Shown here: positions 13,792-31,799 of the stretch, piece after piece
How positions within the stretch are numbered: position 1 is the stretch's first letter
Layout of the letters: each line of letters begins with the position of its first letter
NCBI RefSeq assembly: GCF_000315625.1
Contig: NW_005434576.1
Span: forward strand, 124,001-188,000
Reading direction: 5' to 3'
DNA: 64,000 nt
DNA from: Guillardia theta CCMP2712
Lineage: Eukaryota; Protista; Cryptophyta
The notes under the pieces: generated by a model
What the model was told of the DNA's origin: nothing
What the model saw: only the letters and a program-made list of their open reading frames with translations
Database searches by the model: none
Position numbers and translations under genes: made by a program

Positions 13792-14730
13792 ATGGCGAAG
13801 GAGCAAGTGGTTCGAGCGCTGATAGAGCTCGGCTTCGATGCTGAGAGGAGCGAGGCAGCGGCAGAAGCATGCGGAGACAGCGTGGAAGCGGCGGTTGCAT
13901 GGCTCGTGCAAAGAGGCGAGCAGGGGAGCCAAGGGAGAGGAGCGAGCGGACAAGCTGTTTCTGGTGGACCCGGCGGACAGGTTTCGGAGGAGAGAAGCCG
14001 AGCTGAAGCGAGAGACGAGCAGATTGATGCTGTGGGCAGCGAGGGTCCTGTCGTGGATCAATCGGGAGGGAACGTGTGGAGTGTGGTTGGAGGTTGGCCA
14101 GAGGACCCCCTGGTTTGTCTTGCAGACACGAATCAATTCAATTTGCATGATACGGGAGATGGTTGGGTTGTGATGCATGCGACTATGGGTCAACCTCTTC
14201 TATTCATTGCGGAGACCAGCACATGGTATGGGAAGATGTTCGCAGGGGGAGCAAGAGAGGTTGAGTACATTCTTACCGATGTGGGGCGTCGGCCAATCGT
14301 CAAGATATCGAAAGCTTTCGGTTTTTTCTCGCAGGAAGCTAAGGTTTCTTACATTGTAGCACCAGAAAACGCCATCCTGGCGGACCGCTTGTCGATAGGC
14401 TCCATCAAGCAAGAGACTACGTTCTCACGTCGCACATTCCTTGTCTCGGATTCAACTCCGCATCATGCTGCTGGCGACGTCACCATAGAAGCTCCCAGCT
14501 TTGCAGACAAGCCCTTCACGATCAAGCTCGGGGACAGTACTCTTGGTACCATCATGCAGCCGAAAAATGGACTTGGCGTCGCCTCAATCTCTCTGCATCC
14601 GAACGCGTTGGATCCTTTCCGGTCAAACAGGATGAGAGCGCTTTTGATCGCGGCTGCTGTAATCATCAGTGACGTCCATTGGGGCATGTCGCCTGGCCCA
14701 GCGACTATCTTGAAAGCTCTGCCGCATTAG
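13792..14730 (+). CDS. UBA domain + scramblase/LURP-one (tubby C-like) protein
   Basis: Uninterrupted 312-aa ORF. N-terminal LIELGFDAERSEAAAEACGDSVEAAVAWL is UBA-like. A beta-rich region ends in the helix RMRALLIAAAVIISD typical of scramblase/LURP folds. Confidence 0.7.
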   Translation: MAKEQVVRALIELGFDAERSEAAAEACGDSVEAAVAWLVQRGEQGSQGRGASGQAVSGGPGGQVSEERSRAEARDEQIDAVGSEGPVVDQSGGNVWSVVGGWPEDPLVCLADTNQFNLHDTGDGWVVMHATMGQPLLFIAETSTWYGKMFAGGAREVEYILTDVGRRPIVKISKAFGFFSQEAKVSYIVAPENAILADRLSIGSIKQETTFSRRTFLVSDSTPHHAAGDVTIEAPSFADKPFTIKLGDSTLGTIMQPKNGLGVASISLHPNALDPFRSNRMRALLIAAAVIISDVHWGMSPGPATILKALPH

Positions 14731-15370: not shown

Positions 15371-16813
15371 ATGGCGAACCAGAGCAGGCGCATGCGCGCG
15401 AATGGGATCTGAGCTGGGCTAGAAGTGGAAGGAAGTAAGGCAAGAGCATTCTTTGAAGCATTTCTCTGCTACATAGCTCTTCAATCTTGTATCAGCGTGC
15501 CATACTCATCTGCATTTCTGCCAAAGGAGCTGCCCCGCACAAACTTCGCCAGCGAAGATGAGCGGCAATATTCAGAGCGTGGAGGTTGCTCCTCAGCCTC
15601 CTCCGTTCTCACCTCCTGTCCCCGTGGGTTCGGACTCGTCGAACTATGGCTCGGGGATCCTAGAGGATACGACATTGGACGAGCCTGTGCTGGACACAGT
15701 GAAAAGAGATTTGGGGATGGTCTGGACCAAGTTAACGAAAGTGATGATGCCTTCGAGGGATACACGGGATGAGCTACGAAACTGGTGAGTCCTGTGCTGG
15801 ATGATTTCTTGCTCTGATCTCCGTTCACGCATGCAGGGATTTGTGGGGGCCTCTTTTTCTTTGTTTGATCCTCGCAATTCTACTCAGCATCGATGAATCT
15901 GGGAACATACAAGAGAGCACGAACAGAGATCGACCTGCGGTTGTCTTCTCCGTCATGCTGTTGGTGAACACTTACATGTCGTTGAGGGCATTCTCTGTTA
16001 ACTTGAATTTCGCGTGTTTCAGGTTGTTTGGGTTGGAGCTGTTGTTGTGACAGTGAACGCGAAGCTATTGGGAGGAAATGTATCATTTTTTCAGGTTCTC
16101 TTTCACTTGTCATGGAGATCTCATGAGATTTTTTGATGTACATGACTGATTGAATTGTTCCATAGAGATTTGTGGTGAGCGATATCGTTGACTCCGTGTG
16201 TCACAGAACATTTGTCTGCTGGGGTACTGCGTGGCTCCGATGATTCTTGCCACTTCGCTTTGTATGATCGTCCGTGTCTCCATCCCCGACCAGGTTGTGA
16301 TGTTTTCCCAGCAAGATGCTGTGACTGATGGTTGGAACAGTACTATTACTGCACTGAAATCAAAGTCCTCAACCTGCAGAATGTCACAGACCCAAGGACT
16401 ATCCGTTGCAATGTATCCTCTTCTCGCGACGTCCTCTTCTTGCTCTGACTAGACTCCCACAGGGCTGGTCGGACGTCACGACATGCCCAGCTGGACGTCA
16501 GTGCGACGTCATCAAGGTCCCGACCATGTCGCCCGTTTGCCTTCGAGTTGGTTGACGCCTACGGCAGACTGGCGTTGCGAACGTTATTCTCCGCCTGCTC
16601 TTCTCCCTGGGAGGGATGCTGTGGTCCTTGCGGTCTTCTCTGGGTTTTCTCTCTGAGGTTATTGCCCGTTGTAACATCATGGCATGAGCGCTGACTGAGA
16701 TGCTTCATGGGCAGGTGGTTGTTCCTCAGAGGCGCGCACTGGCTGCATACCCAGTCTTGCTGTTCTTCACTGCTATCACATGGATGATCATGTTAAGAAC
16801 AAGCTCTGCATAA
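15371..16813 (+). CDS. YIPF6: Yip1-domain Golgi/ER membrane protein, YIPF6-like (5' exons uncertain)
   Basis: TLDEPVLDTVKRDL, ELRNW/DLWGPLFLCLILA, VVWVGAVVVTVNAKLLGGNVSFF/QNICLLGYCVAP and RRALAAYPVLLF are Yip1 motifs; TAA at 16811-16813. Confidence 0.88.
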
Positions 16814-16924
16814 TCTTTAAAGTACAGTTACTTGATACTACCACACATCGAATGAACACCTCACCGTTCAACGGTTACCGTACATACCGGCCGGGCCCGG
16901 CACGCTAGTCAGTGATGGGGGCAA

Positions 16925-16948
16925 AACTTCGACTCCTCTGAGGCGAGT
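16925..16948 (+). repeat. 24-bp direct repeat, left copy (TSD-like)
   Basis: aacttcgactcctctgaggcgagt, identical and in the same orientation as 28479-28502; abuts the left inverted repeat. Confidence 0.92.
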
Positions 16949-17110
16949 CCGGGATGGGTTGTCAAGAAGAGTGAAATCCGTTGCTTCACCCCATCATGGC
17001 GCCAAGATGGCGGGGAGCCGCAGCGCTGCTCGTCATGCGGCTGACGATGGTGATGGGGCAGACGCCAGCAGGCCGAGCAGGTAGGAGGATAGCTGGGGAG
17101 TGAGGAGAGG
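16949..17110 (+). repeat. Terminal inverted repeat, left arm (5' UTR, ATG, signal-peptide exon, intron start)
   Basis: ccgggatgggttgtcaagaagagtg...gtgaggagagg is the reverse complement of ~28317-28478 with about two substitutions. Confidence 0.92.
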
Positions 17111-20100
17111 ACATGTCAAATCCTGTCCATCTCAGGGTACTCCCTCGGAAGCACATCTCAAACGAGCCTTGCAAGCGACTATACAACATTGGCTGGAGGT
17201 AAGGGTCTGTACCGATCTGTCAATCATCTGTCGAACATCAAGGAGGAAGGGGAATGACGTTGTCACTGCAGCTGTGATATCCTCGGACCCGACAACGTCT
17301 TACCAGTTCACCGTGGAGGCATGGGTGAAACTTGAGCCAGTATCGTCCTCTTCGTACGTGGGCGTTGTTGTGGGAGGCATCGACAGTGTGTCATCGGGAA
17401 CATGCACATCCATAAGTGGTAAGAGACTGCGACACGTCGTTGACACACACGAGAGCACTCTCCTCATCGATCATGAAACTTTCAATCTCCTCTCGGTGTG
17501 CTGGGTTTCGGACAGAGTGAAAGGCATTTGCACATATTCGTCCTCCATCCTCACGATTTCTTCTCATCCTGTAACGTCGATTTTTTACTTCCAGGAAGCT
17601 GCTCCAATCCAGTTCCCCTCGGTGGTTGTTCCTCGAACTGTAGTTTATCCACCGTGACATCTCAGAAGTGTGACTTGTCAAAAATCGTGAAAAGTTCGAA
17701 TCCTGAGAAAGGCTCTGGCAGATCATTCATGTTGTACTGCGGAGGACAAAATCAAGCCAGCGGACATTGCGGTATGATTGTTGTGTCAACATCACTGTCC
17801 TTTTGGCCTTGATTACATATGTACAGGACTTGCCGTCGTCAACACCAAACTTGTACAGGAAAGAAATGGAACTGAAGCAAGCATGTTGCTTCTGATTCTT
17901 GTTTGCACCAGATCACCACAGGACCGAACTCGATCCCGATGTCAACCTGGAACCATATTGCCGGTGAGGACGTCTTGTGGTCGAAAGCACGGGCAGAAGA
18001 TGACATCTCATGTACACGGTAGCTTCTTTCATTAGTGGTTCTTTCAAGGTGAAGAAACACACCTTAACTTGGATCGAATGATCAGCTTTATCGGCATGAC
18101 ATCTGAAATGGCTGAACAGATTTATCTCAACGGCGCCCTAAAGGATTCTTTCACATTCAGCACTCTGTCGAGCATCCAAGGTTTACATGCTTTTATTCTG
18201 ATTCTGTCAGTTGACATGCTGGTTTTCTTGTTGTCTTGTTTCCAAAGGTTCACATTCTCTCTCAATTGCAAGTAGAAAGACACTTGTAAGATAAAGGAGG
18301 GAGGCAGGGAGGCAGGGAGGCAGGGAGGCGGGCAGGAAGGGATGCAGGGAACGAGGGAGGGAGGGAAAGAGCACGTCGATTCAAAGAATGAAAACATTGA
18401 AGTTATGGACAATCAGGGAAGCGGGTTTGGATATGGCTGCTTCAGCGGCTCGTTGGATGAGATAAGAATATGGAAACAGGTAAGCTCTCAATCCAGATAG
18501 TGCAGGGAATGATGATCCTGATCGCGATGACCATTCTGACGGAGATCATGCGAATTGATGATAATGAAACGTGTCGTTAGCGTTTCTGATCGATCTGATC
18601 AGTTATGCTCCAGGTACGAAATCCTCAACAGACCATGATAGACATGCTGGATACTTCAGCAAAGGTCACAGACCTTGTGTATTACTGGTAGATGACATTC
18701 TACTCCCAATACCTCTATCAAGAAGTAAGCGTGATATTGCATTTTCCATTGATACAAGCTGGCAGGCAATTCAACGAGGGGGTCAAGGTTCAGAACTCAA
18801 CTGGAAATCGTGTCATCATCGAGGGGATAACGGTCAGTGGGTCTAAGAGGGCTATGAAATCTTGAATACCATCTCACGTGATTGTTCAAGGGGACTCTTA
18901 TGACTATCTCAACTATTCCAACATTCCAAACTCAACCCGTTGGTAAAGTCTTCGTTCCCCTCCTCTTCTCCACCGGGTCTTATGTGACCGTGTCTTGTCT
19001 TGTCTTGTCTTGTCTTGTCTTGTCTTGTCTTGTCTTGTCTTGTCTTTCTTTCTTAACCCTTCTCCATTGATGAATCAGACTTGCTCTGATAACTCACAAA
19101 TGGTGATATGGGTATATCAACATCCCCTTCAAATCTACACACCCACCCTTTTTTTTTCTGATACAAGTTTTTTCAGTTGACGGAGCCACGTACATTGACA
19201 GACCAGCAAAGGCAGTGATCAGCGCAATCTCCGGTTGTACTTTGACAACTCTCCAAAACGGCAACATTGTCATCACATACAGGTCATCCACTCGTTTGCT
19301 ATGCTAAGCACGACGACACATTTTTTCGACAATCTTCAACTGTTTGTTATCGTCTTTGATGTTCCACATGACCGAATGTCACTTATACTCATCTCAACCC
19401 TCTCGTTTCCTCCTTCATGGCTACATCTCTCCCCGACCTTGATTTCCGATTCCTGTTTGTTCACTTGCTCTCTAAAAGTTTTTTCTCTACAGCCTGGGGG
19501 TCGAAGGGAAATGGAAAATTGCTCTCAGCGATCAGAACCCCAACGACGGCATCTCCATCTCTGATCCTCCTTTTCTTCCAGCCCCATATGGCATTCCGCA
19601 GGTGAGGAGTAAGGAACAGGAGCAGGGAAGAGGGGGAAGAAATGTGCAGAAGTCTTACGACGCAAACTATGCAGGATGCAACTTTCAGTGATACTGGAAC
19701 TGCTCCTTGTGTTGGCAGCACTCCTCCTTGTCTTCCTAGTTACTGCAACGGGAATGCCGAATGTCCTGTAAAATCTCCTTCTCTTCTCTTCCTCCTTATT
19801 CCATTCCTCGTCCTCCCTCGTCTACTCGCGTCCCTCCTCCATTTCATCCTCCTCTTCTCATTACCTCCCTATGCTTTTGCCTGCTGTCATCGTCCCCTTC
19901 CTACTGCTCTCCTTGCCCCTCCTTCCTCTCTCCTCCCTCTGCTTCGCCCGCCTCCTCCCTGACGCTTTTGGTCCTGCGTGCAGCCCAACCAGTTGATCGG
20001 TTCCTACATAGAGAGAGTTCTCACCTGGAACCCTCAGAACAACGCGGGCTGGGTCGTTCCTGCTGGGGGTTTTGAAATTCGAATCTCCTCAATTGAGAGG

Positions 20101-22762
20101 CCGACAAGTGGAAACTCGGCACAGATTCCAGCTCCCCAACGCACCATCCTCGTTCCTACTGTCTTCCTCTTTGTGCAGGTGGGTAGGAGAACATACAAGA
20201 GACGAGGAAGAGGACGACAAGAGGGAGGAGCGGAGGAGGCAGAGCGGAGAGAGGAGAGAGGAGAGAGGAGAGAGGAGAGAGGGGAGAGGAGAGAGGAGAG
20301 AGGAGAGAGGAGAGAGGAGAGAGGAGGGGAGAATTGCAGTGGCAGAAGGGAAGGAAGCGAGCTAGATAATGATTTCTCCCAGGCCAATCCAGAGTTTGTG
20401 AGTCCAACACCTGGAGGGCAGGTGATGATCCAAAAACATCTTACGGCTCCCCTCAAACCTCCTCGCATCCCTTCTCCCCTCCTCTTGCACGGCCCCCCCC
20501 CTGACGTCCATGTGGACAGGATACAGCCGCCTTCGTCTTCACGTCCTACATCGGAGAGGAAGTAGCGTTCACCATTCGGGTGCAGCAGCGAAACTTCGGG
20601 CAGCAGGTGGATATAGTCACCGCTGAGGTACAGGACTCTGCCTCCTCATACTCCTCCTCCTCCTCGTATTCCTCCTCCTCCTCCTGGTACTCCTCCACGT
20701 ACTCCACCTCCTCCACGTACTCCTCCTCCTCCTCCTCGTACTTGTCCACCACCATCACCTCCTCCTCCTCCTCCTCCTCCTCCTCCTCCTCCTCCTTCCT
20801 CTCCTTCTGCCCCCATCCCTTGACGAGCTATTTCTTCCTCCAGGACCCTGGCCAACCAAATGGAGCTGTGACGTCAGCGCAAGAGGAGCAGGTCGCAACT
20901 GCCTCAACTCCATACTATGCGCAGAGATCGTAAGAGGCCAACATGCTGTGATGAGCCGCTGACACCTGACCATTCGATCAACTTCACCTTGACTGCTCCC
21001 TCCGTCCAATTTCTTTCTCCTCCCCTCTTCAATTTCTCCTTTACGGTTTTATCCTGCCCCTCTCCTCTCCTCTCCCCATCTCCTCCTCTCCTCCTCCTCT
21101 CCTCCTCCTCTCCTCCCCTCCTCTCCTCCTCCCCTCTCCCGTAGATTCTCCTGGACCCCCGTCTGCCAGCAGGCTGGTCTCGCTCGTGTCCTCTTCCTCG
21201 TCACCAGCCGAGAGGTTCCCTCCCTCAGCATCTCCAAGCTCATCCACATCGACGTCGTCACGCCGCAGCCCGTGATCCTCAACATCTCGACCTCGAGCAG
21301 GTGAGGCCGCGAGGGCTGCGAGAGGAGGAGGAGACAGAGCTGACGAGAGGGGGCGAGGACAGTCAGATGCGGGTAGGATGCGAGATGATGCTGGAGGTAC
21401 AAGCGGCGGACGGGAGGGAGGAGACGAGGAGGAGGAACAACTCGGCGTACGGGCAGGACTTCAACTTCACCATCTGGCGGTGGGACGCGGGGAGGACGAC
21501 GAGGACGGCGATGCCGCTGACGACAGCGGGGGTGAGCATAGGGGGGGCAGAGGCGAACGCGTACAACGGGACGACGGGGAGGTAGGCGAGAGGCGGAGAC
21601 GAGGAGGGGGGAAGGGAGGAGAGGGGAGGGCAGGAGGGCGGGAGACAAGCAGGGGAGGAGAGGGGGCAGGGAGCTGACGAGGGAGGGGACGCAGGCTGAT
21701 GTGGAAGCCGGTGAGGGGGCAGGAAGGAGGAGAGTACGAGATCTGCATGGTGGTGAGAGATGGATGTCACGTGGGGGTGCCGGCGGAAGGCTGCGTGAAC
21801 ATGAGCATCGCCAAGTGCCAAGCGTGTCTGGCAGCTGGGGACTCGCTGGAGGGGCTGGCGCGGCAGTACCGGACGGACTTCTTGTCCTTGTACACGTTCA
21901 ACGTCGGGCTGGGTAAGGAAGGGGAGAGGCAGGGGGAGGGTGCGGGGAGGGGAGCGAGAAGGGGAGAAGGGACTGACAAGGAGGGGCAGGTAACCCAGAC
22001 AGCGTCACGGTGGATCGACCGATCAACGTGGGCTTCCTCTACCGGGTGAGTCAAGAGGAGGAGGGGGAAGGAGGAGCTGAGAGGGGAGGGGCACAGGTGA
22101 AGGAGGGGGACACGCTGGACGAGCTTGGGAGGACGTTCTTCACGGAGATAGGAAGTCTTCTTGAGGCGAGGAGGGAGGAGGAGGGGGAGGAGGAACGAGA
22201 GGGGAGGAGGGAGGGGGAGGAGGGGAAGGACGAGCTGCGAGGGAAGGGGGACGTGGAGGGAAGGGGGATCGGAGGGAAGGGGGAAGGGGGAGGGGCTGAG
22301 AGGAGGAGGTGCAGGTGAACAGCGACATCGCGGAGAGGAACAACATTGCTACGGAATACTGGAGGGGAGGCACGGTTGTAGCGGGTAAGAAGGGGAGAGG
22401 GGGCTGAAGGGAGGAGGGGGCTGAAGGGAGGAGGAGGAGGAGGATGAGGATGAGGGCGAGGGCGAGGGCGAAGAAGAGGATGTTGACGAGCAAGAGAAGG
22501 AGGACAAGGAGGAAAAGGAAGGAAGAGCAGGAGGACGAGGAGCAGTACAAAGAGAGGGACAGAGAGAAGGGAGGAGGAAGGGGAGGACTTGAGGGGGAAG
22601 AGTGAAGGAGGGAGATTGCAATAGCTCTCTGACGTGAGAGGAGGAGCAGGGAACGTGAGTACTGTTATCATCTACCCCGGAGAAGATATCTGCATCGTCA
22701 ATATGATGTGCCACGTTCAATGTGACAATACTGGTTGCTTGTCCACTCAGACCTTCGTCTGA
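16996..22762 (+). CDS. Large secreted protein A: signal peptide, LamG/concanavalin-like domain, Cys-containing beta repeats, two LysM domains
   Basis: Signal peptide MAPRWRGAAALLVMRLTMVMG; LamG motifs YQFTVEAWVKL, IYLNGALK, FSGSLDEIRIW; LysM-like CLAAGDSLEGLARQYRTDFLSLYTFN and VKEGDTLDELGRTFFTEIGSLLEVN...IYPGEDICI; stop 22760-22762. Confidence 0.75.
21141..22442 (+). repeat. Internal inverted repeat, left arm (~1.3 kb of exons and introns)
   Basis: Near-identical reverse complement of ~23404-24698, including introns, with scattered substitutions (e.g. EICMVV vs EICVVV). Confidence 0.92.
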
Positions 22763-22896
22763 TGTACTCTTGTTACTTGCTCCCACTCCTCTTCCTCTCT
22801 CTCTCCCTCGTCCTCTTCCTCTTCCTGGTCCTACTTCACTCTTGAATTTTGTTTTCATGTACATAAATGCCTCCTGATGGTTGTAACGAGATGGGA

Positions 22897-23013
22897 GGAG
22901 AGAAGAGGAGAGGAGAGGAGTGGAGAGGAGAGGAGAGGAGAGGAGAGGAGAGGAGAGGAGAGGAGAGGAGAGGAGAGGAGAGGAGAGGAGAGGAGAGGAG
23001 AGGAGAGGAGAGG
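22897..23013. repeat. (AGGAG)n microsatellite between the convergent LysM genes; representative of many simple repeats, e.g. (GTCTT)n ~18991-19044, (GGACA)n ~38146-38205, (GAGCAG)n ~59219-59333, (CAT)n ~57942-58019
   Basis: Direct inspection of the sequence. Confidence 0.95.
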
Positions 23014-23157
23014 ATGAGATAAAATGAAAGGTGAACATGACGCGACTGAGAGTGGAGGATGGCTTATTTTCTGACACAGGTCAAGAACGATCCAACAAGA
23101 CATGACTGCAGGATTCAATCTTTCGTGTCTGCTCTTACTATACAACATGTACAACAT

Positions 23158-25383
23158 TCATCTCAGCTTGCACTCTGACGACGAGCATTCCACTCTACAC
23201 ACGGAGGAGACAACGCAGACCTGACAAGAAAGCATGTGACAACACTGAGACAGCAGCATGATGTTTCTATCATCACCTTCTCGCCAGGTAGGATGAGAAT
23301 ACTGCTCGTGTTCCCTCCTACTCTCTCCGAGTCAACACATCCTCCTCCTCCTCCTCCTCCTTTTTCCTCAGCCTCAGCCTTTTGCCACTTCCTCTTCATC
23401 CCTCTCCTCCTCCTCCTCCCTTCAGCCCCCTCCTCCCTTCAGCCCCCTCTCCCCTTCTTACCCGCTACAACCGTGCCTCCCCTCCAGTATTCCGTAGCAA
23501 TGTTGTTCCTCTCCGCGATGTCGCTGTTCACCTGCACCTCCTCCTCTCAGCCCCTCCCCCTTCCCCCTTCCCTCCGATCCCCTTCCCTCTCAGCTCGTCC
23601 TTCCCCTCCTCCCCTCCCCTCCCCTCTCGTTCCTCCTTCCCTCTCCTCCTCCCTCCTCGCCTCAAGAAGACTTCCTATCTCCGTGAAGAACGTCCTCCCA
23701 AGCTCGTCCAGCGTGTCCCCCTCCTTCACCTGTGCCCCTCCCCTCTCAGCTCCTCCTTCCCCCTCCTCCTCTTGACTCACCCGGTAGAGGAAGCCCACGT
23801 TGATCGGTCGATCCACCGTGACGCTGTCTGGGTTACCTGCCCCTCCATGTCATGCCCTTCTCCCCTTCTCGCTCCCCTCTCCGCTCCCTCCCCCTGCCTC
23901 TCCCCTTCCTTACCCAGCCCGACGTTGAACGTGTACAAGGACAAGAAGTCCGTCCGGTACTGCCGCGCCAGCCCCTCCAGCGAGTCCCCAGCTGCCAGAC
24001 ACGCTTGGCACTTGGCGATGCTCATGTTCACGCAGCCTTCCGCCGGCACCCCCACGTGACATCCATCTCTCACCACCACGCAGATCTCGTACTCTCCTCC
24101 TTCCTGCCCCCTCACCGGCTTCCACATCAGCCTGCGTCCCCTCCCTCGTCAGCTCCCTCGCCCCCTCACCCTCCCCTGCTAGTACTAACAGACCACCAAG
24201 ACAACCCCATAACCTCACTTCCCCCCTCATCGTCTCCGCCTCATCGCCTACCTCCCCGTCGTCCCGTTGACGCGTTCGCCTCTGCCCCCCCCTATGCTCA
24301 CCCCCCGCTGTCGTCAGCGGGCATCGCCGTCCTCGTCGTCCCTCCCCCCCCCCCCACCGCCAGATGGTGAAGTTCCCCCCCCCCCCCCGTACGCCGAGTT
24401 GTTCCTCCTCCTCGTCTCCTCCCTCCCGTCCGCCGCTTGTACCTCCAGCATCATCTCGCATCCTACCCGCATCTGACTGTCCTCGCCCCCTCTCGTCAGC
24501 TCCTCTGTCTCCTCCTCTCGCAGCCCTCGCGGCCTCACCTGCTCGAGGTCGAGATGTTGAGGATCACGGGCTGCGGCGTGACGACGTCGATGTGGATGAG
24601 CTTGGAGATGCTGAGGGAGGGAACCTCTCGGCTGGTGACGAGGAAGAGGACACGAGCGAGACCAGCCTGCTGGCAGACGGGGGTCCAGGAGAATCTACGA
24701 GAGAGGAGAGGAGGAGAGGAGAGGAGGAGAGCAGGAGAAGAGGAGGAAGGGAAAGCAAAGGGGGTTAGGGCAAGTCGGGAGGGGACACGAGGAGGAGAGG
24801 GGAGAAGAGATGAAGTCGATAGTATCAGGAGGTGAAGGGACAGGATAGGGAAAGCAACGTATCAGTGGCTTATCGTCGGTTTGGATGTCTTGTTACCTCT
24901 GACCGACTTCGACGGGTTCACTTGCTGATCTTGTTTGTAAATTTGTTGTGAGATTGGAGAACGTGGCATAAGATGGACTTCCATATATCTGCAGCACGGC
25001 AAAGTCAGTGACGGATACTGTTCTTGTTCTTTGTTATGAGGCAAGTTGGGTTGAAAGCGGGTGTTTGGTCTGCCTTTGTGATCGATGATGCAGATTAATC
25101 TTACCTCGTCAATGCTAAAGATAACTTGTTGATCAACATTGCGCAACAGGACTTGAATCATGAAGTTGAGGTTGTCTCCGATGTACATGAGCATTTCGAA
25201 AGGCTGAGAGCTCTGCATGAAGAGAGTTAGAGGAGAAGAGTGCTTGCTACTTGTGTGTACGTTTCCTCCGGGTGTTGGATAAGTGAACTCCAGCGGCAAC
25301 TGAAAGGAAGGCGAATTCAGTTTGAGACCACGAGATATGGCCCAGAACAAAGCAGCAGATAAATCCAGCAAAGGAGGGCTAGA

Positions 25384-25426
<43 letters not shown>

Positions 25427-28400
25427 GGAGGAGGAGGAGGAGGATTACAAAGAGGAGGAGGATCAGGTGTACTAGGAGGAGGAGGACGAGGAGGAGGAAG
25501 AGAAGGAGGGGAAGGAGAAGAAGAGTAGGGTAGACAACATTTCTCTGAGCAAACAACAACCGATACGTGTCAACAAGGAGACATTCTCAGGAATTTCTAC
25601 CCAGGTGAAGAGATAGATGGGAGGCAAGGCGATGCTCCTAGCTGGGGCAGGGCGGAAGGGGTCGAAGAAGTTGGAGGGAGTTTCTTTGAGGAGGAAAAGA
25701 AGTTGAAAACCATGCCGAGGAATGACAGCAATCTTAACGTCGGAAGGTCTCCATGAAACAGTAAGAACGTGGTACGACCCCACCCACTTGTTGTCCTGAC
25801 GATGATGACGATGATCGTACGAACGAGGGCGAGGAGGAGGAGGAGGAGGAGGAGGAGGAGGAGGAGGAGGAGGAGGAGGAAGGGGGAGGAGGAGGAGGAA
25901 GGGGGAGGAGGAGGAGGAGCAAGAGCAAGAGCAAGAGCAAGAGCAAGAGGGAGGGCAAAAGATGAGTCCAAAACGGAACGAGGATGAATTGGATGAGAAG
26001 AAAACGAAAGTGAGAGATAAGAGTAAGTCAGTCATCACTTTCCTCATATGAATGACGATAATGAAACCTGACAGATGGTCGGGAAGGGGCATTGATGGCA
26101 AGAGCAGTTGAAGATGTCGTAACATGAGCACGTCTGAACCTGTTGCAAGGGTGGTTGTAAGATTTTCTCCTTGACATGTCCGACAACGGAGAATTAAAGC
26201 ACAATATCATTCATGATGAGCGGTTGAAAAGAAGCAAAGCACGGAGAAAGCACAAACACGAGAACAAGTCACGCGACATTGCAAAGAGATGGAAAGAACA
26301 CGTTCACGATCACAAGATTCGAAACAGTGTTCAAACACAATGCACATGACTACCTGACTTGTGATCTTCAAATCTGTGAAGACGGTAGGATTCAACAAGA
26401 CAAGATCAAGTCGATCCAACGGATTTGCATCAACAAGCTGAATCTGCAAGGTACCAACTTGGTTGTTGCTACATCATCTCAGTCAGGTGTTGTTAGATTG
26501 TTCAAACAGAACTGTCCCATCACCCGAACTCAAAGATCTGCATGGCTGCATCCTTCATAGAAGCACTTCCCCCCGTCTGATAATTGAGGCCCGCAAGTCT
26601 GTCCATGTATGAGGCTCCGCTGACTGGATAGAGGAGTTTTCAGCAAGGGATAAGATCGATATCTGCCCTCACCGACTGCTTCTGATTCCGTCTGGTAAAA
26701 GGTCGACGTCATTGCGGTCGTATCGTTGAAAGACCTGAAGAAAATATCAGACAATGCTCACAAGGTGGCACAAGGTGGAGAGCATTTGCCAAGTTGCTGG
26801 GGTCAAATGAAAACGAAACTCGAACGTTGCTGAACATGTTTACAACCATGAACAACAGCACGCACAGCATCACATCGACATTCGAATGAGATGAGGGAAA
26901 ATGTCTCTTCTCACCAATAGTACGCAAGTCCGTTCTGTTTGCATCTTGACAACAAGCTCGCATTGCAAGCTGTCTCGAAAGCATCCATGCTCAACTGCCA
27001 TCCTTCTCTCACCTGACCCAAGAGCGTCATTCCTCTCCCTTCCTTGTCCGCACGTCTTTCATTACAGTCTCCCAGATTCGTATCTCGTCCATATTTCCGC
27101 TCAGGTACGAAGTTTGTCCCATTGCCTGTCAAAGTGAAAGGTGCGTCAGGTAACGTGAAACGTTTTCTGCTCTACCTGAAAATCTGCTCGGCCCCCGAGG
27201 GAGATCTTGTTGACGTTTCCTGTGCCATCCATCTTTCAACGACGATGCTCAAGAAGGAAGTGACCACCTGATCGGATCAGCGGAGGCAAGACGACGCTGT
27301 TTACTTGTTTTGCATCCACGTAGAACTGATCAGGGTTGTCAAGTCATACTTGCCCAGCGATGAAGATGAAGAACACTGACGTACTTTCATCGTTCCGTTG
27401 CTGTATGTTGCTGATCGATGGAGCAATCAATCGCACATCAAGGAACATGTCAAAGTTCGAGCTGACCTGAGATGTGCGTCCATGTACCGAACACGATGCT
27501 CTGACTCTCCGAGGTTATCTGAAAACTCAGTTGGTCATTCAAAACCTCAACAAACTGATCAGCTTGCCTGATAAAGAGTGTTGGATGATGACACAACGAA
27601 GCCTGCTCGTTCGGTCTGAGTGTTACAAAGACAAACATCCTCCCCTGAGGTAGAGGAGAAAGACACACCGCAATAGGGATTTGCGCTAGTCTGTCCGCAA
27701 AACAGCAAGAAACCTTCGTTTGTAGAGGATGATCTGAAAGAGGGTCTCAGCAGTGCCTCGATAACCCAATGATGCTATCAGTGTACGAGCTCATTCCGCA
27801 TTGAACAGAGCAGGATCCAAGGTATGAAGTACCGCCGCAATCTATCACAATACTCGTCAAACGGTGCACAACTACCCGATGGGAGGAATTTCATAATTTC
27901 CTACTTGTCAGATTCAAGCAGCTCGTCGTGCTCACTGTGTTCAGCGTCCCAACAATGTAGTTGATGTCGCTCGCTGGCGTCTTCTGCACTAGCCGAACCT
28001 GTTGCTTCTTCATCATGCCTTCAGCAGGCCAAAGCGCTTTGTATCACCCAAGCCTGAACCGCCAAGTCCTGTGTGTTCAAAACTGCAAAATGGCCCACAT
28101 CAAAAGAGGAGCAAGGAGCAGGAGATGGTGTTCGTACCTGGACTGGAAACCTCTACAGGAGCATTCCATGTCGTCCCAGAGACCGGCGGAGTGACCATAA
28201 TGGAATATCCTGCCAGCTCAGATCAACATCCCCCAGGGCCCCTTTGCACCGTACAACACATCACTTCCACAGGCCTGAGGCTCCCTCACCGTTGAGGGCA
28301 GCAATCCCTCCCTCTCCCTCTCCTCACTCCCCAGCCATCCTCCTACCTGCTCGGCCTGCTGGCGTCTGCCCCATCACCATCGTCAGCCGCATGACGAGCA

Positions 28401-28431
28401 GCGCTGCGGCTCCCCGCCATCTTGGCGCCAT
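23158..28431 (-). CDS. Large secreted protein B, paralogue of A (signal peptide, LamG, repeats, LysM x2); apparent frameshifts at 24180-24390 may be base-call errors
   Basis: Same first exon as A; diverged LamG motifs (GTWTHISG, FYVDAK, YLSGNMDEIRIW); shared LysM exons; private last exons ILILPGEK/VCVVSSVCRVECSSSECKLR*. Confidence 0.7.
23404..24698 (-). repeat. Internal inverted repeat, right arm
   Basis: Reverse complement of 21141-22442; the ORF track shows matching translations (e.g. 21699-22049 + vs 23777-24127 -). Confidence 0.92.
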
Positions 28432-28478
28432 GATGAGGTGAAGCAACGGATTTCACTCTTCTTGACAACCCATCCCGG
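28317..28478 (-). repeat. Terminal inverted repeat, right arm
   Basis: Ends ...cttgacaacccatcccgg at 28478, the reverse complement of the sequence starting at 16949. Confidence 0.92.
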
Positions 28479-28502
28479 AACTTCGACTCCTCTGAGGCGA
28501 GT
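28479..28502 (+). repeat. 24-bp direct repeat, right copy (TSD-like)
   Basis: aacttcgactcctctgaggcgagt, identical to 16925-16948. Confidence 0.92.
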
Positions 28503-29010
28503 GTGGCGTGGCAAATATTATCCGACCGGATACCGGGCCCGGCCCAGGCTGACCGTACACCGTGGCACTCAGTGACTGAGAGCGGGCGCCTCTGAGTCGG
28601 CAGTCACGGGGCCCGGCCCGCGGCCGGGGCCGGCGGGGGAGCCTCGGAGCCTGGCCCCCGCGGGGGCGGGGCTACCGTACTACCCGGCGGGCCCGGCCGC
28701 TAAACCCGCGGCCCGCGGCGCCGTGTCACGTTGTGGCCAAAGTGCCAATGTGCCTCCGGGGCCCGGGTGGAGGGGGGGCCCGGGCCGCGGCGTGGCAATT
28801 AAGTTCGGCCAGCGCCCGGAACCCGGCGTTCCGGGAACTTTGCCAGGTTTCCGTGCTGCGGGACGGTCGACCGGAGTCGGCGGAATGTCACACGGTGTTC
28901 CGCGGGTTCAACATGATAGCCTGAGCCCATTTGATGCCCGGCCCTTGAATGTGCCGCCCACCGCTCCAACGGTGCCAGCCTTCCCCACCCGCGGCCCTTA
29001 CACGCGCTAG
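28503..29010. promoter_or_regulatory. GC-rich island with palindromic CCGGGCCCGG and ACTCAGTGACTGAG motifs
   Basis: Abrupt rise in GC and CpG; the same motifs recur at 14780-15340, 16870-16920, 42170-42610, 49290-49500 and 56040-56140. Confidence 0.45.
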
Positions 29011-29146
29011 AACGCAGCACAGAGGAGTTGCCTTGGTGTGTGTGATGGAGTGAACTGGAAAATGAGATCGAATTGAAGTAGGCTTTCAAAGTTAGTGTAA
29101 ACAGAGAGGGCAAATATCTTTCAACTTAGATTTTAGCACGTCAAGA

Positions 29147-29821
29147 TCAAGCTATCGAGGGAACAAAGTGCAGCATCATCAGGCACATCATGCTCAGAAC
29201 AAATAGGATGGGTATAGTCCACCAAGACCACACCGGCCAGAGTGCAATGGGGAAAGAGACTGCTGAAGTGACAACACAGATGGCAGCTAGCCCGATGGCC
29301 CTTTTCACAGGCTTGCTGTGCGGGTTCCCCGCATCTCTAGAATTGTAAGCTGTCTCCCACTGAATGTTATGCACGATTGCAAGCCAGAATATAAGATAGA
29401 TCATCACTATGAGTACTGCAACACAACACAACAAAGCAAGGTTCAGGAAAAACCGATTCACCCTATCATCAACTAGCACCACTTGAACGAACTCAGTAGC
29501 GTTGAGAACAGCAAATCCTGCAATGAGCCAGCAGATTGCCTCGACTTTGCTCTTGATCTGCGCCTTTCTTGATCTCAAGTACTTGTTGTGCCAGTAATCT
29601 TCAACTCGGTTCCATTCGGCCGTTCCATGATTCGTGTTCGGGCGCAATCCTGGAATCTTGGTGATCTTTTCTGCATCCGCAAGAGCGTTCAAGATATTCT
29701 CCGCGACCTTTCTGCCCTGGGGAACCCTCGATCGCATTTCATTCTCAGGCGCATCTTGTTGCACGCTTGGGTTGGAAGAAAGTAGGGTGTCAGTCTCATT
29801 TGCATGATCGTCCTTCTCCAT
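29147..29821 (-). CDS. TMEM128-like four-TM membrane protein
   Basis: Single ORF with four hydrophobic segments; DDRVNRFFL and ALWPVWSWWTIPILFVLSM resemble TMEM128. Confidence 0.7.
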   Translation of the reverse strand: MEKDDHANETDTLLSSNPSVQQDAPENEMRSRVPQGRKVAENILNALADAEKITKIPGLRPNTNHGTAEWNRVEDYWHNKYLRSRKAQIKSKVEAICWLIAGFAVLNATEFVQVVLVDDRVNRFFLNLALLCCVAVLIVMIYLIFWLAIVHNIQWETAYNSRDAGNPHSKPVKRAIGLAAICVVTSAVSFPIALWPVWSWWTIPILFVLSMMCLMMLHFVPSIA

Positions 29822-30052
29822 GCTGATCAAGCTGTCAAAAACAAAAGTAAGCGGGTATGAACATGTGAAAATCATTGTCGACATCATTTGCTGCGATATT
29901 TACCACACTTCAACGGCAGTCAAAAGTGTGCGAGAGGGTCCCAACCCTAGATTTCGCTACCTTGTTTGCATACTGAATTTAGGCACCGTATTTACTTGAA
30001 TTTTGATGATTGATATAATAAACACAATCATAGCAAAACAGGGAGAGTTGAC

Positions 30053-30353
30053 ATGGAATCATTGCGAGGAGGATCAGTGTTGACAACAACGGAGCAGAAA
30101 AGGAAGGAGCAAATGCGATGAATACATAAATTAGGGACAAACGAGTGAAAATCTGGATCTATTGAGGATGTGCAGATCGATTCTGCAATTGGCTATCATG
30201 TACGCGTTCTTGATCGCTCTCGCCACTCTCTTGTATGCCCTCTACCATACTTCGCTCCTGCTGACCGACCCGACCAACTTCCGTTCAGCACATTGTCCTT
30301 CTGAGGCGGACTCAGCGACCTGGTTTGTGTGTGAAATTCAGACGGAGGGGTAG
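30053..30353 (+). CDS. Small single-TM hypothetical protein (probably spliced)
   Basis: LQLAIMYAFLIALATLLYALYH followed by a Cys-pair tail (HCPSEADSATWFVCEIQTEG*); start uncertain. Confidence 0.35.
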
Positions 30354-31063
30354 TAAGACTCCAGGGGTCAGAAAGTATGGTGGTTACGAGGACAAGAATA
30401 TGGATAATTAAGGGGTGGGTCTTTTGATGAGGGGTCATGTAATTAAGTGGGGTGGGGGATGCTGTAGGAGGGTATTTTAAATATGAACATGGTACAGATA
30501 ATAATTCTGAATCTGTACTGAATTGAGGGATCCTTCTGGTTCTTTTGTATTGAAAATCACTTCAATATATATAATAGTAACAAAAAAAGATACAAATTTT
30601 GTTCAGAATTAACTTATTTCAAAATTCCAAAAAAGCTACCAGATTTTAAAAGTGGACACCATTGGGAGACCACACAATCATACAGCGTAATCTACCCTAC
30701 CCTACCAATTAAGCATAAACTTGGGTAATGATCAGGGGTATCCTTAGTACCCCGACCACCCTGCCCATCCCCTGAGTGCTCATCATAGACGTCACAAGGC
30801 AATGCTACCCTACCTTCGACACGACATACCCCCCAGACCATCTTGTGATGAGGACTCTTTCTAGTAATATCTCTGCAAGGCTGCTTATAGTAAGACATTT
30901 TATTAAGTAACAGTATCAATAAAAGTTTGATACCCACCGATATTCCATCTCTTCCCATATCACCCCGACCTACCCTTGAGAAACAACCCCTGTCAATCAG
31001 CTACCCCTACCCCAAAAGATCAATGACACCGGGTGGGTGGGTGGCCTCCTCACTCACGCGGCT

Positions 31064-31799
<736 letters not shown>

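What the first reader, a model, noticed from the sequence alone, without database searches (positions are those of the whole stretch)
16925..28502. 11.5-kb two-gene cassette with terminal inverted repeats and an exact 24-bp flanking direct repeat
Seen: the block 16949-28478 starts and ends with ~160-bp inverted repeats (about two mismatches). The 24-mer aacttcgactcctctgaggcgagt abuts both ends in direct orientation (16925-16948, 28479-28502). The inverted repeats contain the 5' UTR, ATG and signal-peptide exon of two inward-facing LamG-LysM paralogues whose central parts are highly diverged. Removing the block leaves one continuous GC island between the 3' ends of YIPF6 and the TMEM128-like gene, as an empty site would. 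Known: DR-TIR...TIR-DR is the geometry of a DNA-transposon insertion, and Mutator elements transcribe convergent genes from their TIRs, but 24 bp is far longer than typical DDE target duplications and no transposase is visible. Inference: a non-autonomous mobile or amplifiable unit carrying secreted glycan-binding genes, or the scar of a template-switch repair event.
Basis: partly seen in the sequence, partly recalled or inferred. Interest (0 to 1): 0.85.

Follow-up and report, generated by a model that had tools for sequence, protein, structure and literature searches.

The report
Convergent lectin-gene pair with repair scar
Two old, tail-to-tail copies of a secreted sugar-binding gene in the alga Guillardia theta have been made identical again in two short patches; one patch ends in an odd 24-base repeat that looks like a transposon footprint but most likely is a DNA-repair scar.

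Summary
A 163-nt inverted repeat (T; 2 mismatches) bounds 16949-28478, and an exact 24-mer (D) abuts both ends in direct orientation. Both junctions are backed by data from two sequencing studies. The mobile-element reading is not supported. T and D occur only here in the 87-Mb assembly. The block is filled by two spliced genes, A (+) and B (-, GUITHDRAFT_145175: signal peptide, Laminin_G_3, LysM), leaving no room for a transposase. T is one of two near-identical patches in an otherwise saturated, collinear paralogue pair. Protein identity runs 100% in exon 1, 25-46% in the LamG and middle part, 90-99% in a 1.36-kb internal patch, and 42% in the last exons. In that internal patch both arms share 8 of 11 differences from a wild relative, which indicates concerted evolution. 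That relative has the same left junction. Best reading (about 0.55): an old convergent gene pair patched by gene conversion, with the T'+D end a young break-repair scar copied from the contiguous donor 16925-17110, its 24-nt end flipped. A one-off cassette insertion with a 24-bp target duplication remains possible (about 0.2). Interest is modest.

The parts
16925..16948 (+). D-left: 24-mer direct repeat, about 111 nt after the stop of the Yip1-family gene
   Evidence: Exact copy of 28479-28502. These are the only two copies in the genome. Crossed by the X2 and X6 DNA contigs and by the X7 RNA contig.
16949..17110 (+). T-left: near-identical patch 1 (47 nt of leader, exon 1, 30 nt of intron 1 of gene A)
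   Evidence: The donor at 17081 is supported by an RNA joint.
16996..22762 (+). Gene A (signal peptide, LamG-like, middle region, LysM module, Cys-rich tail). Exons 1-10 are RNA-supported; the rest is placed by homology to gene B.
   Evidence: Spliced RNA contig X7 with GT..AG joints. P0006 maps onto the arm. Stop at 22760-22762.
17111..21091 (+). Diverged body of gene A (LamG plus middle part)
   Evidence: No nucleotide similarity to arm B. Collinear exons at 25-46% aa identity. No other copy in the genome.
21092..22453 (+). Near-identical patch 2, arm A (internal exons and introns, including the LysM module)
   Evidence: 94.2% over 1378 columns, with long 100% runs broken by clustered differences. 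RNA exons 21145-21297 and 21360-21610.
22454..23395 (.). Diverged last exons of both genes, plus about 395 nt between the stop codons (A stop 22760-22762, B stop 23158-23160), with a (GGAGA)n tract
   Evidence: C-terminal exons 42% identical.
23396..24747 (-). Near-identical patch 2, arm B
24748..28316 (-). Diverged body of gene B (Laminin_G_3 plus middle part)
   Evidence: P0006 maps here at 80-100%. Laminin_G_3 at 57.8 bits. The part searched (25950-28316) has no other copy in the genome.
23158..28431 (-). Gene B = GUITHDRAFT_145175, 585 aa
28317..28478 (-). T-right: near-identical patch 1 in gene B (30 nt of intron 1, exon 1, 47 nt of leader)
28479..28502 (+). D-right: 24-mer direct repeat
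   Evidence: Junction words are held by runs of two studies.
16873..16907 (+). 35-nt GC-rich flank motif, left copy
   Evidence: 31/35 identical, in direct orientation, to 28670-28702. Rare in the genome.
28503..29067 (.). Right-flank GC island (71% GC at 28500-28999) between D-right and the 3' end of the TMEM128 mRNA; holds the second motif copy at 28670-28702
   Evidence: unique in the genome; the TMEM128 transcript ends at 29068.

Best explanation
The locus is an old, convergent (tail-to-tail) pair of paralogous host genes of Guillardia theta. They encode secreted proteins with a signal peptide, a LamG domain and a LysM module. It is not a mobile element.

The pair arose by an ancient local inverted duplication. 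Most of both genes has since diverged beyond nucleotide recognition. Two patches have been re-homogenised by non-reciprocal recombination (gene conversion) between the inverted copies. One is the 163-nt leader/exon-1 patch (T). The other is a 1.36-kb internal patch that carries the LysM module. The result is a constant secretion signal and constant LysM part joined to two very different LamG and middle parts.

The 24-nt direct repeat is a by-product of the event that made the T patch. The sequence at the right end (T' followed by D) consists exactly of the contiguous donor stretch 16925-17110, with its last 24 nt in the opposite orientation. This is what a double-strand-break repair with a template switch, or a short templated fill-in before end joining, would leave. 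The junctions would carry only 1-2 nt of microhomology (A at T'|D, GT at D|flank).

Shown: the anatomy, the single-copy status, paralogy with a mosaic identity pattern, concerted evolution of the large patch, expression and splicing of gene A, and support for the left junction from an independent contig and for the right junction from sampled words of runs from two studies.

Inferred: gene conversion as the cause of both patches, and the repair mechanism that produced D.
For: 1. Single locus. T and D have only these two copies in 87.1 Mb. Gene bodies A and B and the right GC island are unique, apart from microsatellites.

2. No cargo space. Gene A (16996-22762) and gene B (28431-23158) fill the block. 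No transposase-like hit appeared in the ORF pieces scanned.

3. Old paralogy. The exons are collinear but 25-46% identical in the LamG and middle parts, with no nucleotide match.

4. Mosaic. P0006 on arm A gives aa 1-32 at 94-100%, aa 49-102 at 30%, aa 318-370 at 33%, aa 377-552 at 90-99% and aa 545-582 at 42%. The patches have sharp edges that fall in introns or non-coding DNA.

5. Concerted evolution. At 8 of 11 sites where a wild relative (X6 contig) differs from arm A in 21143-21794, arm B carries the arm-A base. At the other 3 sites it carries the relative's base. The relative's contig there has about 1.7 times the single-copy depth (10.8 against 6.25), which suggests it is two-copy there too.

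6. Both patches are GC-rich (0.63 and 0.65) against 0.49 in the diverged bodies. This fits biased conversion.

7. D is young. It is 24/24 identical while neighbouring neutral DNA of the arms is saturated, so it cannot date from the original duplication. T shows 2/77 non-coding differences.

8. The relative has the same flank-D-T-gene A junction (contig 16001-17350), so that side is at least as old as the split. Its contig shows no fork at the inner edge of T, whereas G. theta's own contigs break at 17090.

9. B exon 2 starts with GYS just as A exon 2 does. B therefore always had a homologous exon 1 available for conversion to act on.

10. Unchecked first-stage notes list many other inverted paralogue pairs with patchy identity in this genome. 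These are leads only.
Against: The DR-IR...IR-DR geometry, with nucleotide-exact, symmetric ends, is explained more simply by one insertion into a 24-nt staggered break. My repair model needs two template switches or joins with almost no microhomology.

The two flanks share a genome-rare 35-nt motif in direct orientation. This fits one GC island split by an insertion.

A patch of 163 nt lying 11 kb from its partner is short for sustained homologous conversion.

The right junction was not seen in any relative, so the age and direction of the event are unknown.

The 'no fork' argument rests on one low-depth metagenome contig.

The differences in the large patch sit mostly in non-coding or low-complexity DNA. 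Purifying selection therefore contributes to the coding identity.
Confidence: 0.55

Rival explanations
1. One-off insertion or relocation of the whole two-gene cassette. An 11.5-kb fragment bounded by the T/T' repeat was inserted between the convergent YIPF6 and TMEM128 genes at a break with a 24-nt stagger, and fill-in gave the 24-bp target duplication. The fragment could have been a transposon-like unit cut at its TIR ends, or a stem-loop cut at the base of the T:T' stem.
For: - Exact DR abutting both IR ends, with no extra base at either end.
- The flanks share a rare 35-nt direct motif and the word CCGGGCCCGGC, as parts of one island would.
- The flanking genes are convergent, so the block lies in a 3'-3' intergenic region.
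Against: - There is no second copy of T, D or the cargo anywhere, so there is no family and no donor site.
- No transposase is present.
- To my knowledge, 24 bp is outside the target-duplication lengths of known DDE superfamilies.
- The cargo is an old paralogue pair with a second, internal homogenised patch, so T need not be a transposon end.
- A relative about 4% diverged already has the left junction, and no empty site was found.
Confidence: 0.2
2. Invertible (flip-flop) cassette. Recombination within T/T' inverts the 11.2-kb segment and swaps which gene body is joined to which upstream region (the short YIPF6-side leader or the 565-nt GC island). Frequent exchange keeps T identical. This is not exclusive of the best explanation.
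For: - T contains the leader and exon 1 of both genes, so either orientation gives intact genes.
- Gene A was silent in one RNA sample (X21) and well covered in another (X7).
- The X2 contig joins the left flank to the right-arm base at 16991. Bubble-popping in the contig assembly explains this equally well.
Against: - No read evidence for the inverted isomer.
- No recombinase or specific site.
- It does not explain D.
- The same near-identity is seen in the internal patch, where inversion has no such effect.
Confidence: 0.07
3. An element integrated by site-specific or homologous recombination of a circle, with D as the shared core (attL/attR-like).
For: Direct repeats of 15-60 nt flank integrated elements. 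D flanks the block exactly.
Against: - No integrase or recombinase gene in the block.
- No other D site in the genome.
- The cargo is ordinary intron-bearing host genes.
- 24 nt is very short for homologous integration.
Confidence: 0.03
4. Assembly artefact at the repeat ends.
For: Repeats of 163 nt can mislead short-read or Sanger assemblies.
Against: D is shorter than a read, and both D|T junctions are distinct sequences. An independent 2011 contig crosses the left junction and a metagenome contig does so too. All sampled words of the right junction are present in runs of two studies.
Confidence: 0.02

Closest known systems
Palindromic or inverted paralogue pairs kept similar by arm-to-arm gene conversion (for example the human Y-chromosome ampliconic palindromes; own knowledge)
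   Same: Two inverted arms with a unique spacer. Within-genome arm identity is higher than identity to the orthologue in a relative (8 of 11 sites). Sharp-edged tracts and GC-rich converted tracts.
   Different: Here only two short patches (163 nt and 1.36 kb) of roughly 5.5-kb arms are homogenised, and the rest is saturated. The genes converge. One patch ends in a flipped 24-nt segment.
Templated insertions and micro-inversions from template switching in break repair (SD-MMEJ, PMC2943611; MMBIR-linked templated insertions, PMC8421209; foldback inversions, PMC10622511; titles and abstracts only were seen)
   Same: A short segment (24 nt) is copied from next to the donor tract, in the opposite orientation. 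The junctions have 1-2 nt of possible microhomology.
   Different: The donor lies 11.5 kb away, not beside the break. The event is coupled to a 163-nt homologous tract. The mechanism is inferred from one locus only.
Class II TIR transposons that carry host genes (Pack-MULE-like or foldback elements; own knowledge)
   Same: Long terminal inverted repeats (about 160 nt), flanking direct repeats, transcription starting in or near the terminal repeats, no transposase inside.
   Different: Single copy. A 24-bp rather than a 2-11-bp duplication. The repeat is a functional leader plus signal-peptide exon. The cargo is two complete old paralogues with introns. No family in the genome.
Inverted duplications at inversion breakpoints from staggered breaks (Drosophila; PMC3355041, title and abstract seen)
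   Same: Inverted duplicated sequence at both ends of a segment, with no transposon needed.
   Different: As I derive it, that model predicts inverted, not direct, duplicates at both breakpoints. It cannot give D-T...T'-D.

Membership tests
TIR DNA transposon (non-autonomous, MULE/foldback-like) | Terminal inverted repeats | tested here: met
   163 nt, 161/163.
TIR DNA transposon (non-autonomous, MULE/foldback-like) | Target-site duplication of the superfamily's fixed short length (2-11 bp) | tested here: not met
   The duplication is 24 bp. The known lengths are from my own knowledge.
TIR DNA transposon (non-autonomous, MULE/foldback-like) | Several copies, or related termini elsewhere in the genome | tested here: not met
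   T and D occur only at this locus in 87.1 Mb. The cargo is unique.
TIR DNA transposon (non-autonomous, MULE/foldback-like) | Transposase in the element or an autonomous partner | tested here: inconclusive
   None inside: two host genes fill the block and no transposase hit appeared in the pieces scanned. A partner elsewhere was not searched for.
TIR DNA transposon (non-autonomous, MULE/foldback-like) | Presence/absence polymorphism (empty sites) | tested here: inconclusive
   Only one relative was seen, and it has the filled left junction. There was nothing in the JGI metagenome contigs.
Inverted paralogue pair under gene conversion | Arms homologous and collinear over their whole length | tested here: met
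Inverted paralogue pair under gene conversion | Mosaic of near-identical tracts with sharp edges within diverged sequence | tested here: met
Inverted paralogue pair under gene conversion | Paralogues more alike within the species than each is to its orthologue (concerted evolution) | tested here: inconclusive
   8 of 11 sites in the large patch support it, but this rests on one collapsed metagenome contig. It was not testable for T.
Template-switch / templated-insertion repair scar | Inserted segment has a nearby template, and the junctions show short microhomology | tested here: inconclusive
   The template (D) adjoins the donor tract T. Possible microhomology is only 1 nt (A) and 2 nt (GT).
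Laminin_G_3 / LysM secreted protein | Pfam domains above the gathering score | tested here: met
   Gene B (P0006) scores Laminin_G_3 at 57.8 bits against a 27.6-bit cut-off. LysM scores only 17.5 bits against a 20.9-bit cut-off, but homologues of the same segment score 39.6 and 28.2 bits. UniRef names it a LysM domain-containing protein.

The most novel reading that the evidence does not exclude
The cassette was moved as a unit by a route not yet described. IR-bounded DNA would be excised exactly at the ends of its inverted repeat, for example at the base of a T:T' stem-loop, and reinserted at a 24-nt staggered break. That would make a single-copy 'mobile' gene pair with no transposase. Alternatively, or in addition, T acts as a flip-flop switch that swaps upstream regions between two lectin genes.
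Probability: 0.15. Interest if true: 0.7.

Novelty: new member of a known kind. Interest (0 to 1): 0.3.

Why it matters
The finding shows how transposon-like geometry (direct repeat, inverted repeat, inverted repeat, direct repeat) can arise at an ordinary host locus, so it warns against calling mobile elements from geometry alone.

Biologically, it documents patchy concerted evolution in a cryptophyte nuclear genome. The secretion signal and the LysM glycan-binding module of two secreted proteins stay identical while their LamG and middle parts diverge freely. This is a simple way to keep a constant anchor joined to two different recognition domains.

If first-stage notes on other loci of this genome hold up, such mosaics may be a general feature of Guillardia.

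The flipped 24-nt end is a clean natural example that could inform models of template switching during break repair.

Tried and rejected
- Hairpin potential of D. Folded as DNA it is not unusual (z = -1.75 alone, about 0 in context). I therefore dropped the idea that a cruciform at D explains a 24-nt stagger.
- Rfam on 16000-29500: only two sub-threshold chance hits.
- Foldback priming at D as the centre of a T'-D-T palindrome. Rejected because 6 nt (AACTTC) separate T' from the stem in D.
- The staggered-break inversion model gives inverted, not direct, duplicates by my own derivation. Rejected.
- A degenerate second copy of the left-flank unit at 28527-28607, seen by eye. Not significant, because only the 35-nt motif stands out, and 1 of 300 shuffles reaches its score.
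- D in JGI metagenome contigs: no match.
- TMEM128 relatives in metagenome contigs: none.
- A 47%-identical TMEM128 contig (L017) shows no synteny and is uninformative.
- Fetching the relative's right junction through an antisense ORF (28073-28438): no homologue.
- Look-up of P0006's own contig was withheld.
- A search with P0006 found only itself, so the duplication could not be dated with Hanusia.
- Raw ORF pieces gave only a weak LamG hit. This was resolved later through P0006.
- Genome sampling for other IR+DR structures. Only 200 kb of contig C1 could be fetched. It held 2 IR pairs, and no flanking direct repeat was found (one pair lies beside an assembly gap).
- I spent it on the left half (16001-22000), so the right junction in the relative and gene B expression were not examined.
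Full report
OBSERVATION

The block is as described. The repeat finder and a blastn self-comparison give inverted arms at 16948-17110 and 28317-28479, 163 nt long and 161/163 complementary. The two mismatches are at 16991 (5 nt before the ATG) and 17091 (intron 1). Identity ends abruptly at both edges.

The 24-mer AACTTCGACTCCTCTGAGGCGAGT is exact at 16925-16948 and 28479-28502, in direct orientation, abutting the arms with a 1-nt overlap. A chance 24/24 match at fixed positions is about 4^-24. In the whole 87.1-Mb assembly, where the window is C98:124001-188000, the 24-mer has only these two copies at up to 3 mismatches. The repeat T also has only these two copies.

ASSEMBLY

A 1935-nt contig of an independent 2011 DNA run (X2) lies on 16001-17090 with one difference, so it crosses flank-D-T. 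All 7 sampled 31-mers of 28440-28545, which spans T'-D-flank, are held by three 2011 runs and one 2021 run. The structure is not an assembly artefact.

ORGANISM AND NEIGHBOURS

The right-hand neighbour (29147-29887, minus strand) is a TMEM128-family gene (PF20479). Its cluster carries the UniRef name Guillardia theta, and its nearest named relative is Hanusia phi at 78%. A transcript, L049, matches 29068-30283 at 100%, so this mRNA ends 566 nt from D-right.

The left-hand neighbour has a weak Yip1 hit on an exon fragment. Its introns are supported by RNA, and its stop lies about 111 nt before D-left.

WHAT FILLS THE BLOCK

A profile-free search with the LysM-containing piece found P0006, a 585-aa protein named GUITHDRAFT_145175 of G. 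theta CCMP2712. It has Laminin_G_3 at 57.8 bits and a sub-threshold LysM at 17.5 bits. Its homologues score 39.6 and 28.2 bits for LysM.

P0006 maps on the minus strand from 28431 to 23161. This is gene B.

Gene A is transcribed and spliced. One RNA contig (X7) shows GT..AG joints at 17081-17135, 17199-17271, 17419-17594 and further on. The resulting protein starts with the same 28-residue signal-like exon and continues with a LamG-like sequence. Gene A ends at 22760-22762.

About 395 nt separate the two stop codons, so nothing else fits in the block.

THE KEY ANATOMY: A MOSAIC

Arm against arm, there is no nucleotide similarity in 17111-21091 versus 24748-28316. The exons there are nevertheless collinear and 25-46% identical. 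A and B are therefore old paralogues.

Two patches are near-identical:
- T.
- An internal 1.36-kb patch at 21092-22453 / 23396-24747. It is 94% identical overall. Runs of 100-270 nt are 100% or nearly 100% identical, and they are broken by clustered differences in low-complexity or non-coding DNA.

The last exons are diverged again, at 42%. Both tracts are GC-rich (0.63 and 0.65, against 0.49 in the diverged bodies).

A WILD RELATIVE

A freshwater-labelled metagenome (X6) holds an organism about 95% identical. One of its contigs lies on 16001-17350, so it has the same flank-D-T-gene A junction.

In 21143-21794 it differs from arm A at 11 listed sites. At 8 of them G. theta's arm B has the arm-A base, and at 3 it has the relative's base. 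That contig has about 1.7 times the single-copy depth.

This is the pattern of concerted evolution, but it rests on one collapsed contig.

The relative's contig also passes the inner edge of T without a fork, whereas G. theta's own contigs break at 17090. This hints that T is not near-identically duplicated there. A few extra mismatches would have the same effect, so I treat it only as a hint.

WHY THIS IS NOT A MOBILE ELEMENT

- There is no family and no donor copy.
- There is no transposase.
- The cargo is two complete intron-bearing host genes.
- The duplication is 24 bp, outside known DDE ranges to my knowledge.
- The right GC island is also unique in the genome.
- In the 264 kb I could inspect, two other inverted-repeat pairs exist, and no flanking direct repeat was found for them; one lies beside an assembly gap.

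WHAT D IS

D cannot date from the ancient duplication. It is 24/24 identical while neutral DNA of the arms is saturated. It must be young, like T, which shows 2 differences in 77 non-coding nt and none in 85 coding nt.

Read in gene orientation, the 24 nt upstream of T in gene B are the reverse complement of those upstream of T in gene A. The right end therefore equals the contiguous donor 16925-17110 with its distal 24 nt flipped.

Two descriptions fit this single fact.

(i) A break in the 5' region of one copy was repaired from the other copy, giving the homologous tract T. A template switch or short templated fill-in on the adjacent 24 nt then preceded joining. Possible microhomology is A at T'|D and GT at D|flank.

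(ii) The whole cassette was inserted into a 24-nt staggered break.

I favour (i) for these reasons:
- T behaves like the second conversion patch.
- B clearly had a homologous exon 1 beforehand, since both second exons start with GYS.
- No trace of mobility exists.

Points for (ii):
- The symmetric, base-exact ends.
- The genome-rare 35-nt motif shared by the two flanks in direct orientation.

I give about 0.55 to the old-pair, conversion and repair-scar reading, and about 0.2 to a one-off insertion. Smaller weights go to a flip-flop cassette, circle integration and artefact. The remainder is for mechanisms I have not thought of.

FUNCTION (INFERRED)

Both proteins should enter the secretory pathway. 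They share an identical LysM-containing module, which would bind peptidoglycan or chitin-type glycans, while their LamG and middle parts differ strongly.

Gene A is well covered in one RNA data set and silent in another. In the expressed set, the contig retains 18248-18402, which carries a stop. A 18181-18402 intron would restore the LamG end motif.

CONTEXT

Unchecked first-stage notes for other windows of this genome describe many inverted paralogue pairs with patchy near-identity. These are leads that agree with my reading, not evidence for it.

LIMITS

- The right junction in the relative, gene B expression and orientation isomers were not examined.
- The full gene A model beyond exon 10 is partly conjectural.
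- The papers cited were seen only as titles and abstracts.

Noticed in passing
window 18296-18366: A G-rich unit of about 70 nt (GGAGGCAGGGAGG...) inside an intron of gene A. It has dozens of copies at 80-97% identity across many contigs, some in tandem. It is either a dispersed minisatellite or a small repeat family.
   Followed up: no
window 17855-17909: The RNA contig X7 skips 53 nt with CA..AC ends, not GT..AG. The frame stays open. A canonical GT..AG alternative (17853-17911) would drop two codons. This may be a non-canonical intron or a contig artefact.
   Followed up: partly
window 18181-18479: The RNA contig of gene A retains 18248-18402, which carries stops in all frames. Splicing 18181-18402 instead gives an intact LamG end (...GCFSGSLDEIRIWKQ). 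This looks like intron retention or an alternative acceptor.
   Followed up: partly
window 16713-17077: One RNA contig runs unbroken from the last exon of the Yip1-family gene, through D and T, into gene A. This implies overlapping UTRs or read-through. In another RNA sample, coverage stops between 16800 and 17000 and gene A is silent.
   Followed up: no
window 16991: The 2011 contig joined to the left flank carries T, the right-arm base, where the assembly has C. This could be bubble-popping in the contig assembly, a conversion polymorphism or an orientation isomer.
   Followed up: no
window 21298-21692 vs 24134-24537: RNA contigs of gene A treat 21360-21610 as exon. The annotated gene B protein skips the equivalent stretch. 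This is either alternative splicing or an annotation error in GUITHDRAFT_145175.
   Followed up: no
window 31037-31799: Two adjacent ubiquitin-fold ORFs: a canonical ubiquitin (112 bits) with a 14-residue N-terminal extension, and a diverged ubiquitin-like domain (41.7 bits) with a hydrophobic leader.
   Followed up: no
window 13792-14727: A single-exon ORF of 312 aa with a UBA domain and a sub-threshold scramblase-like region.
   Followed up: no
G000:C1:198408-199750 (L038): Another local palindrome: 472-nt arms, 98.9% identical, 402-nt spacer, no flanking direct repeat.
   Followed up: partly
window 28620-28700: The right-flank GC island contains an internal imperfect palindrome (73% self-complementary over about 80 nt), together with repeated GGGCCCGG words.
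   Followed up: no
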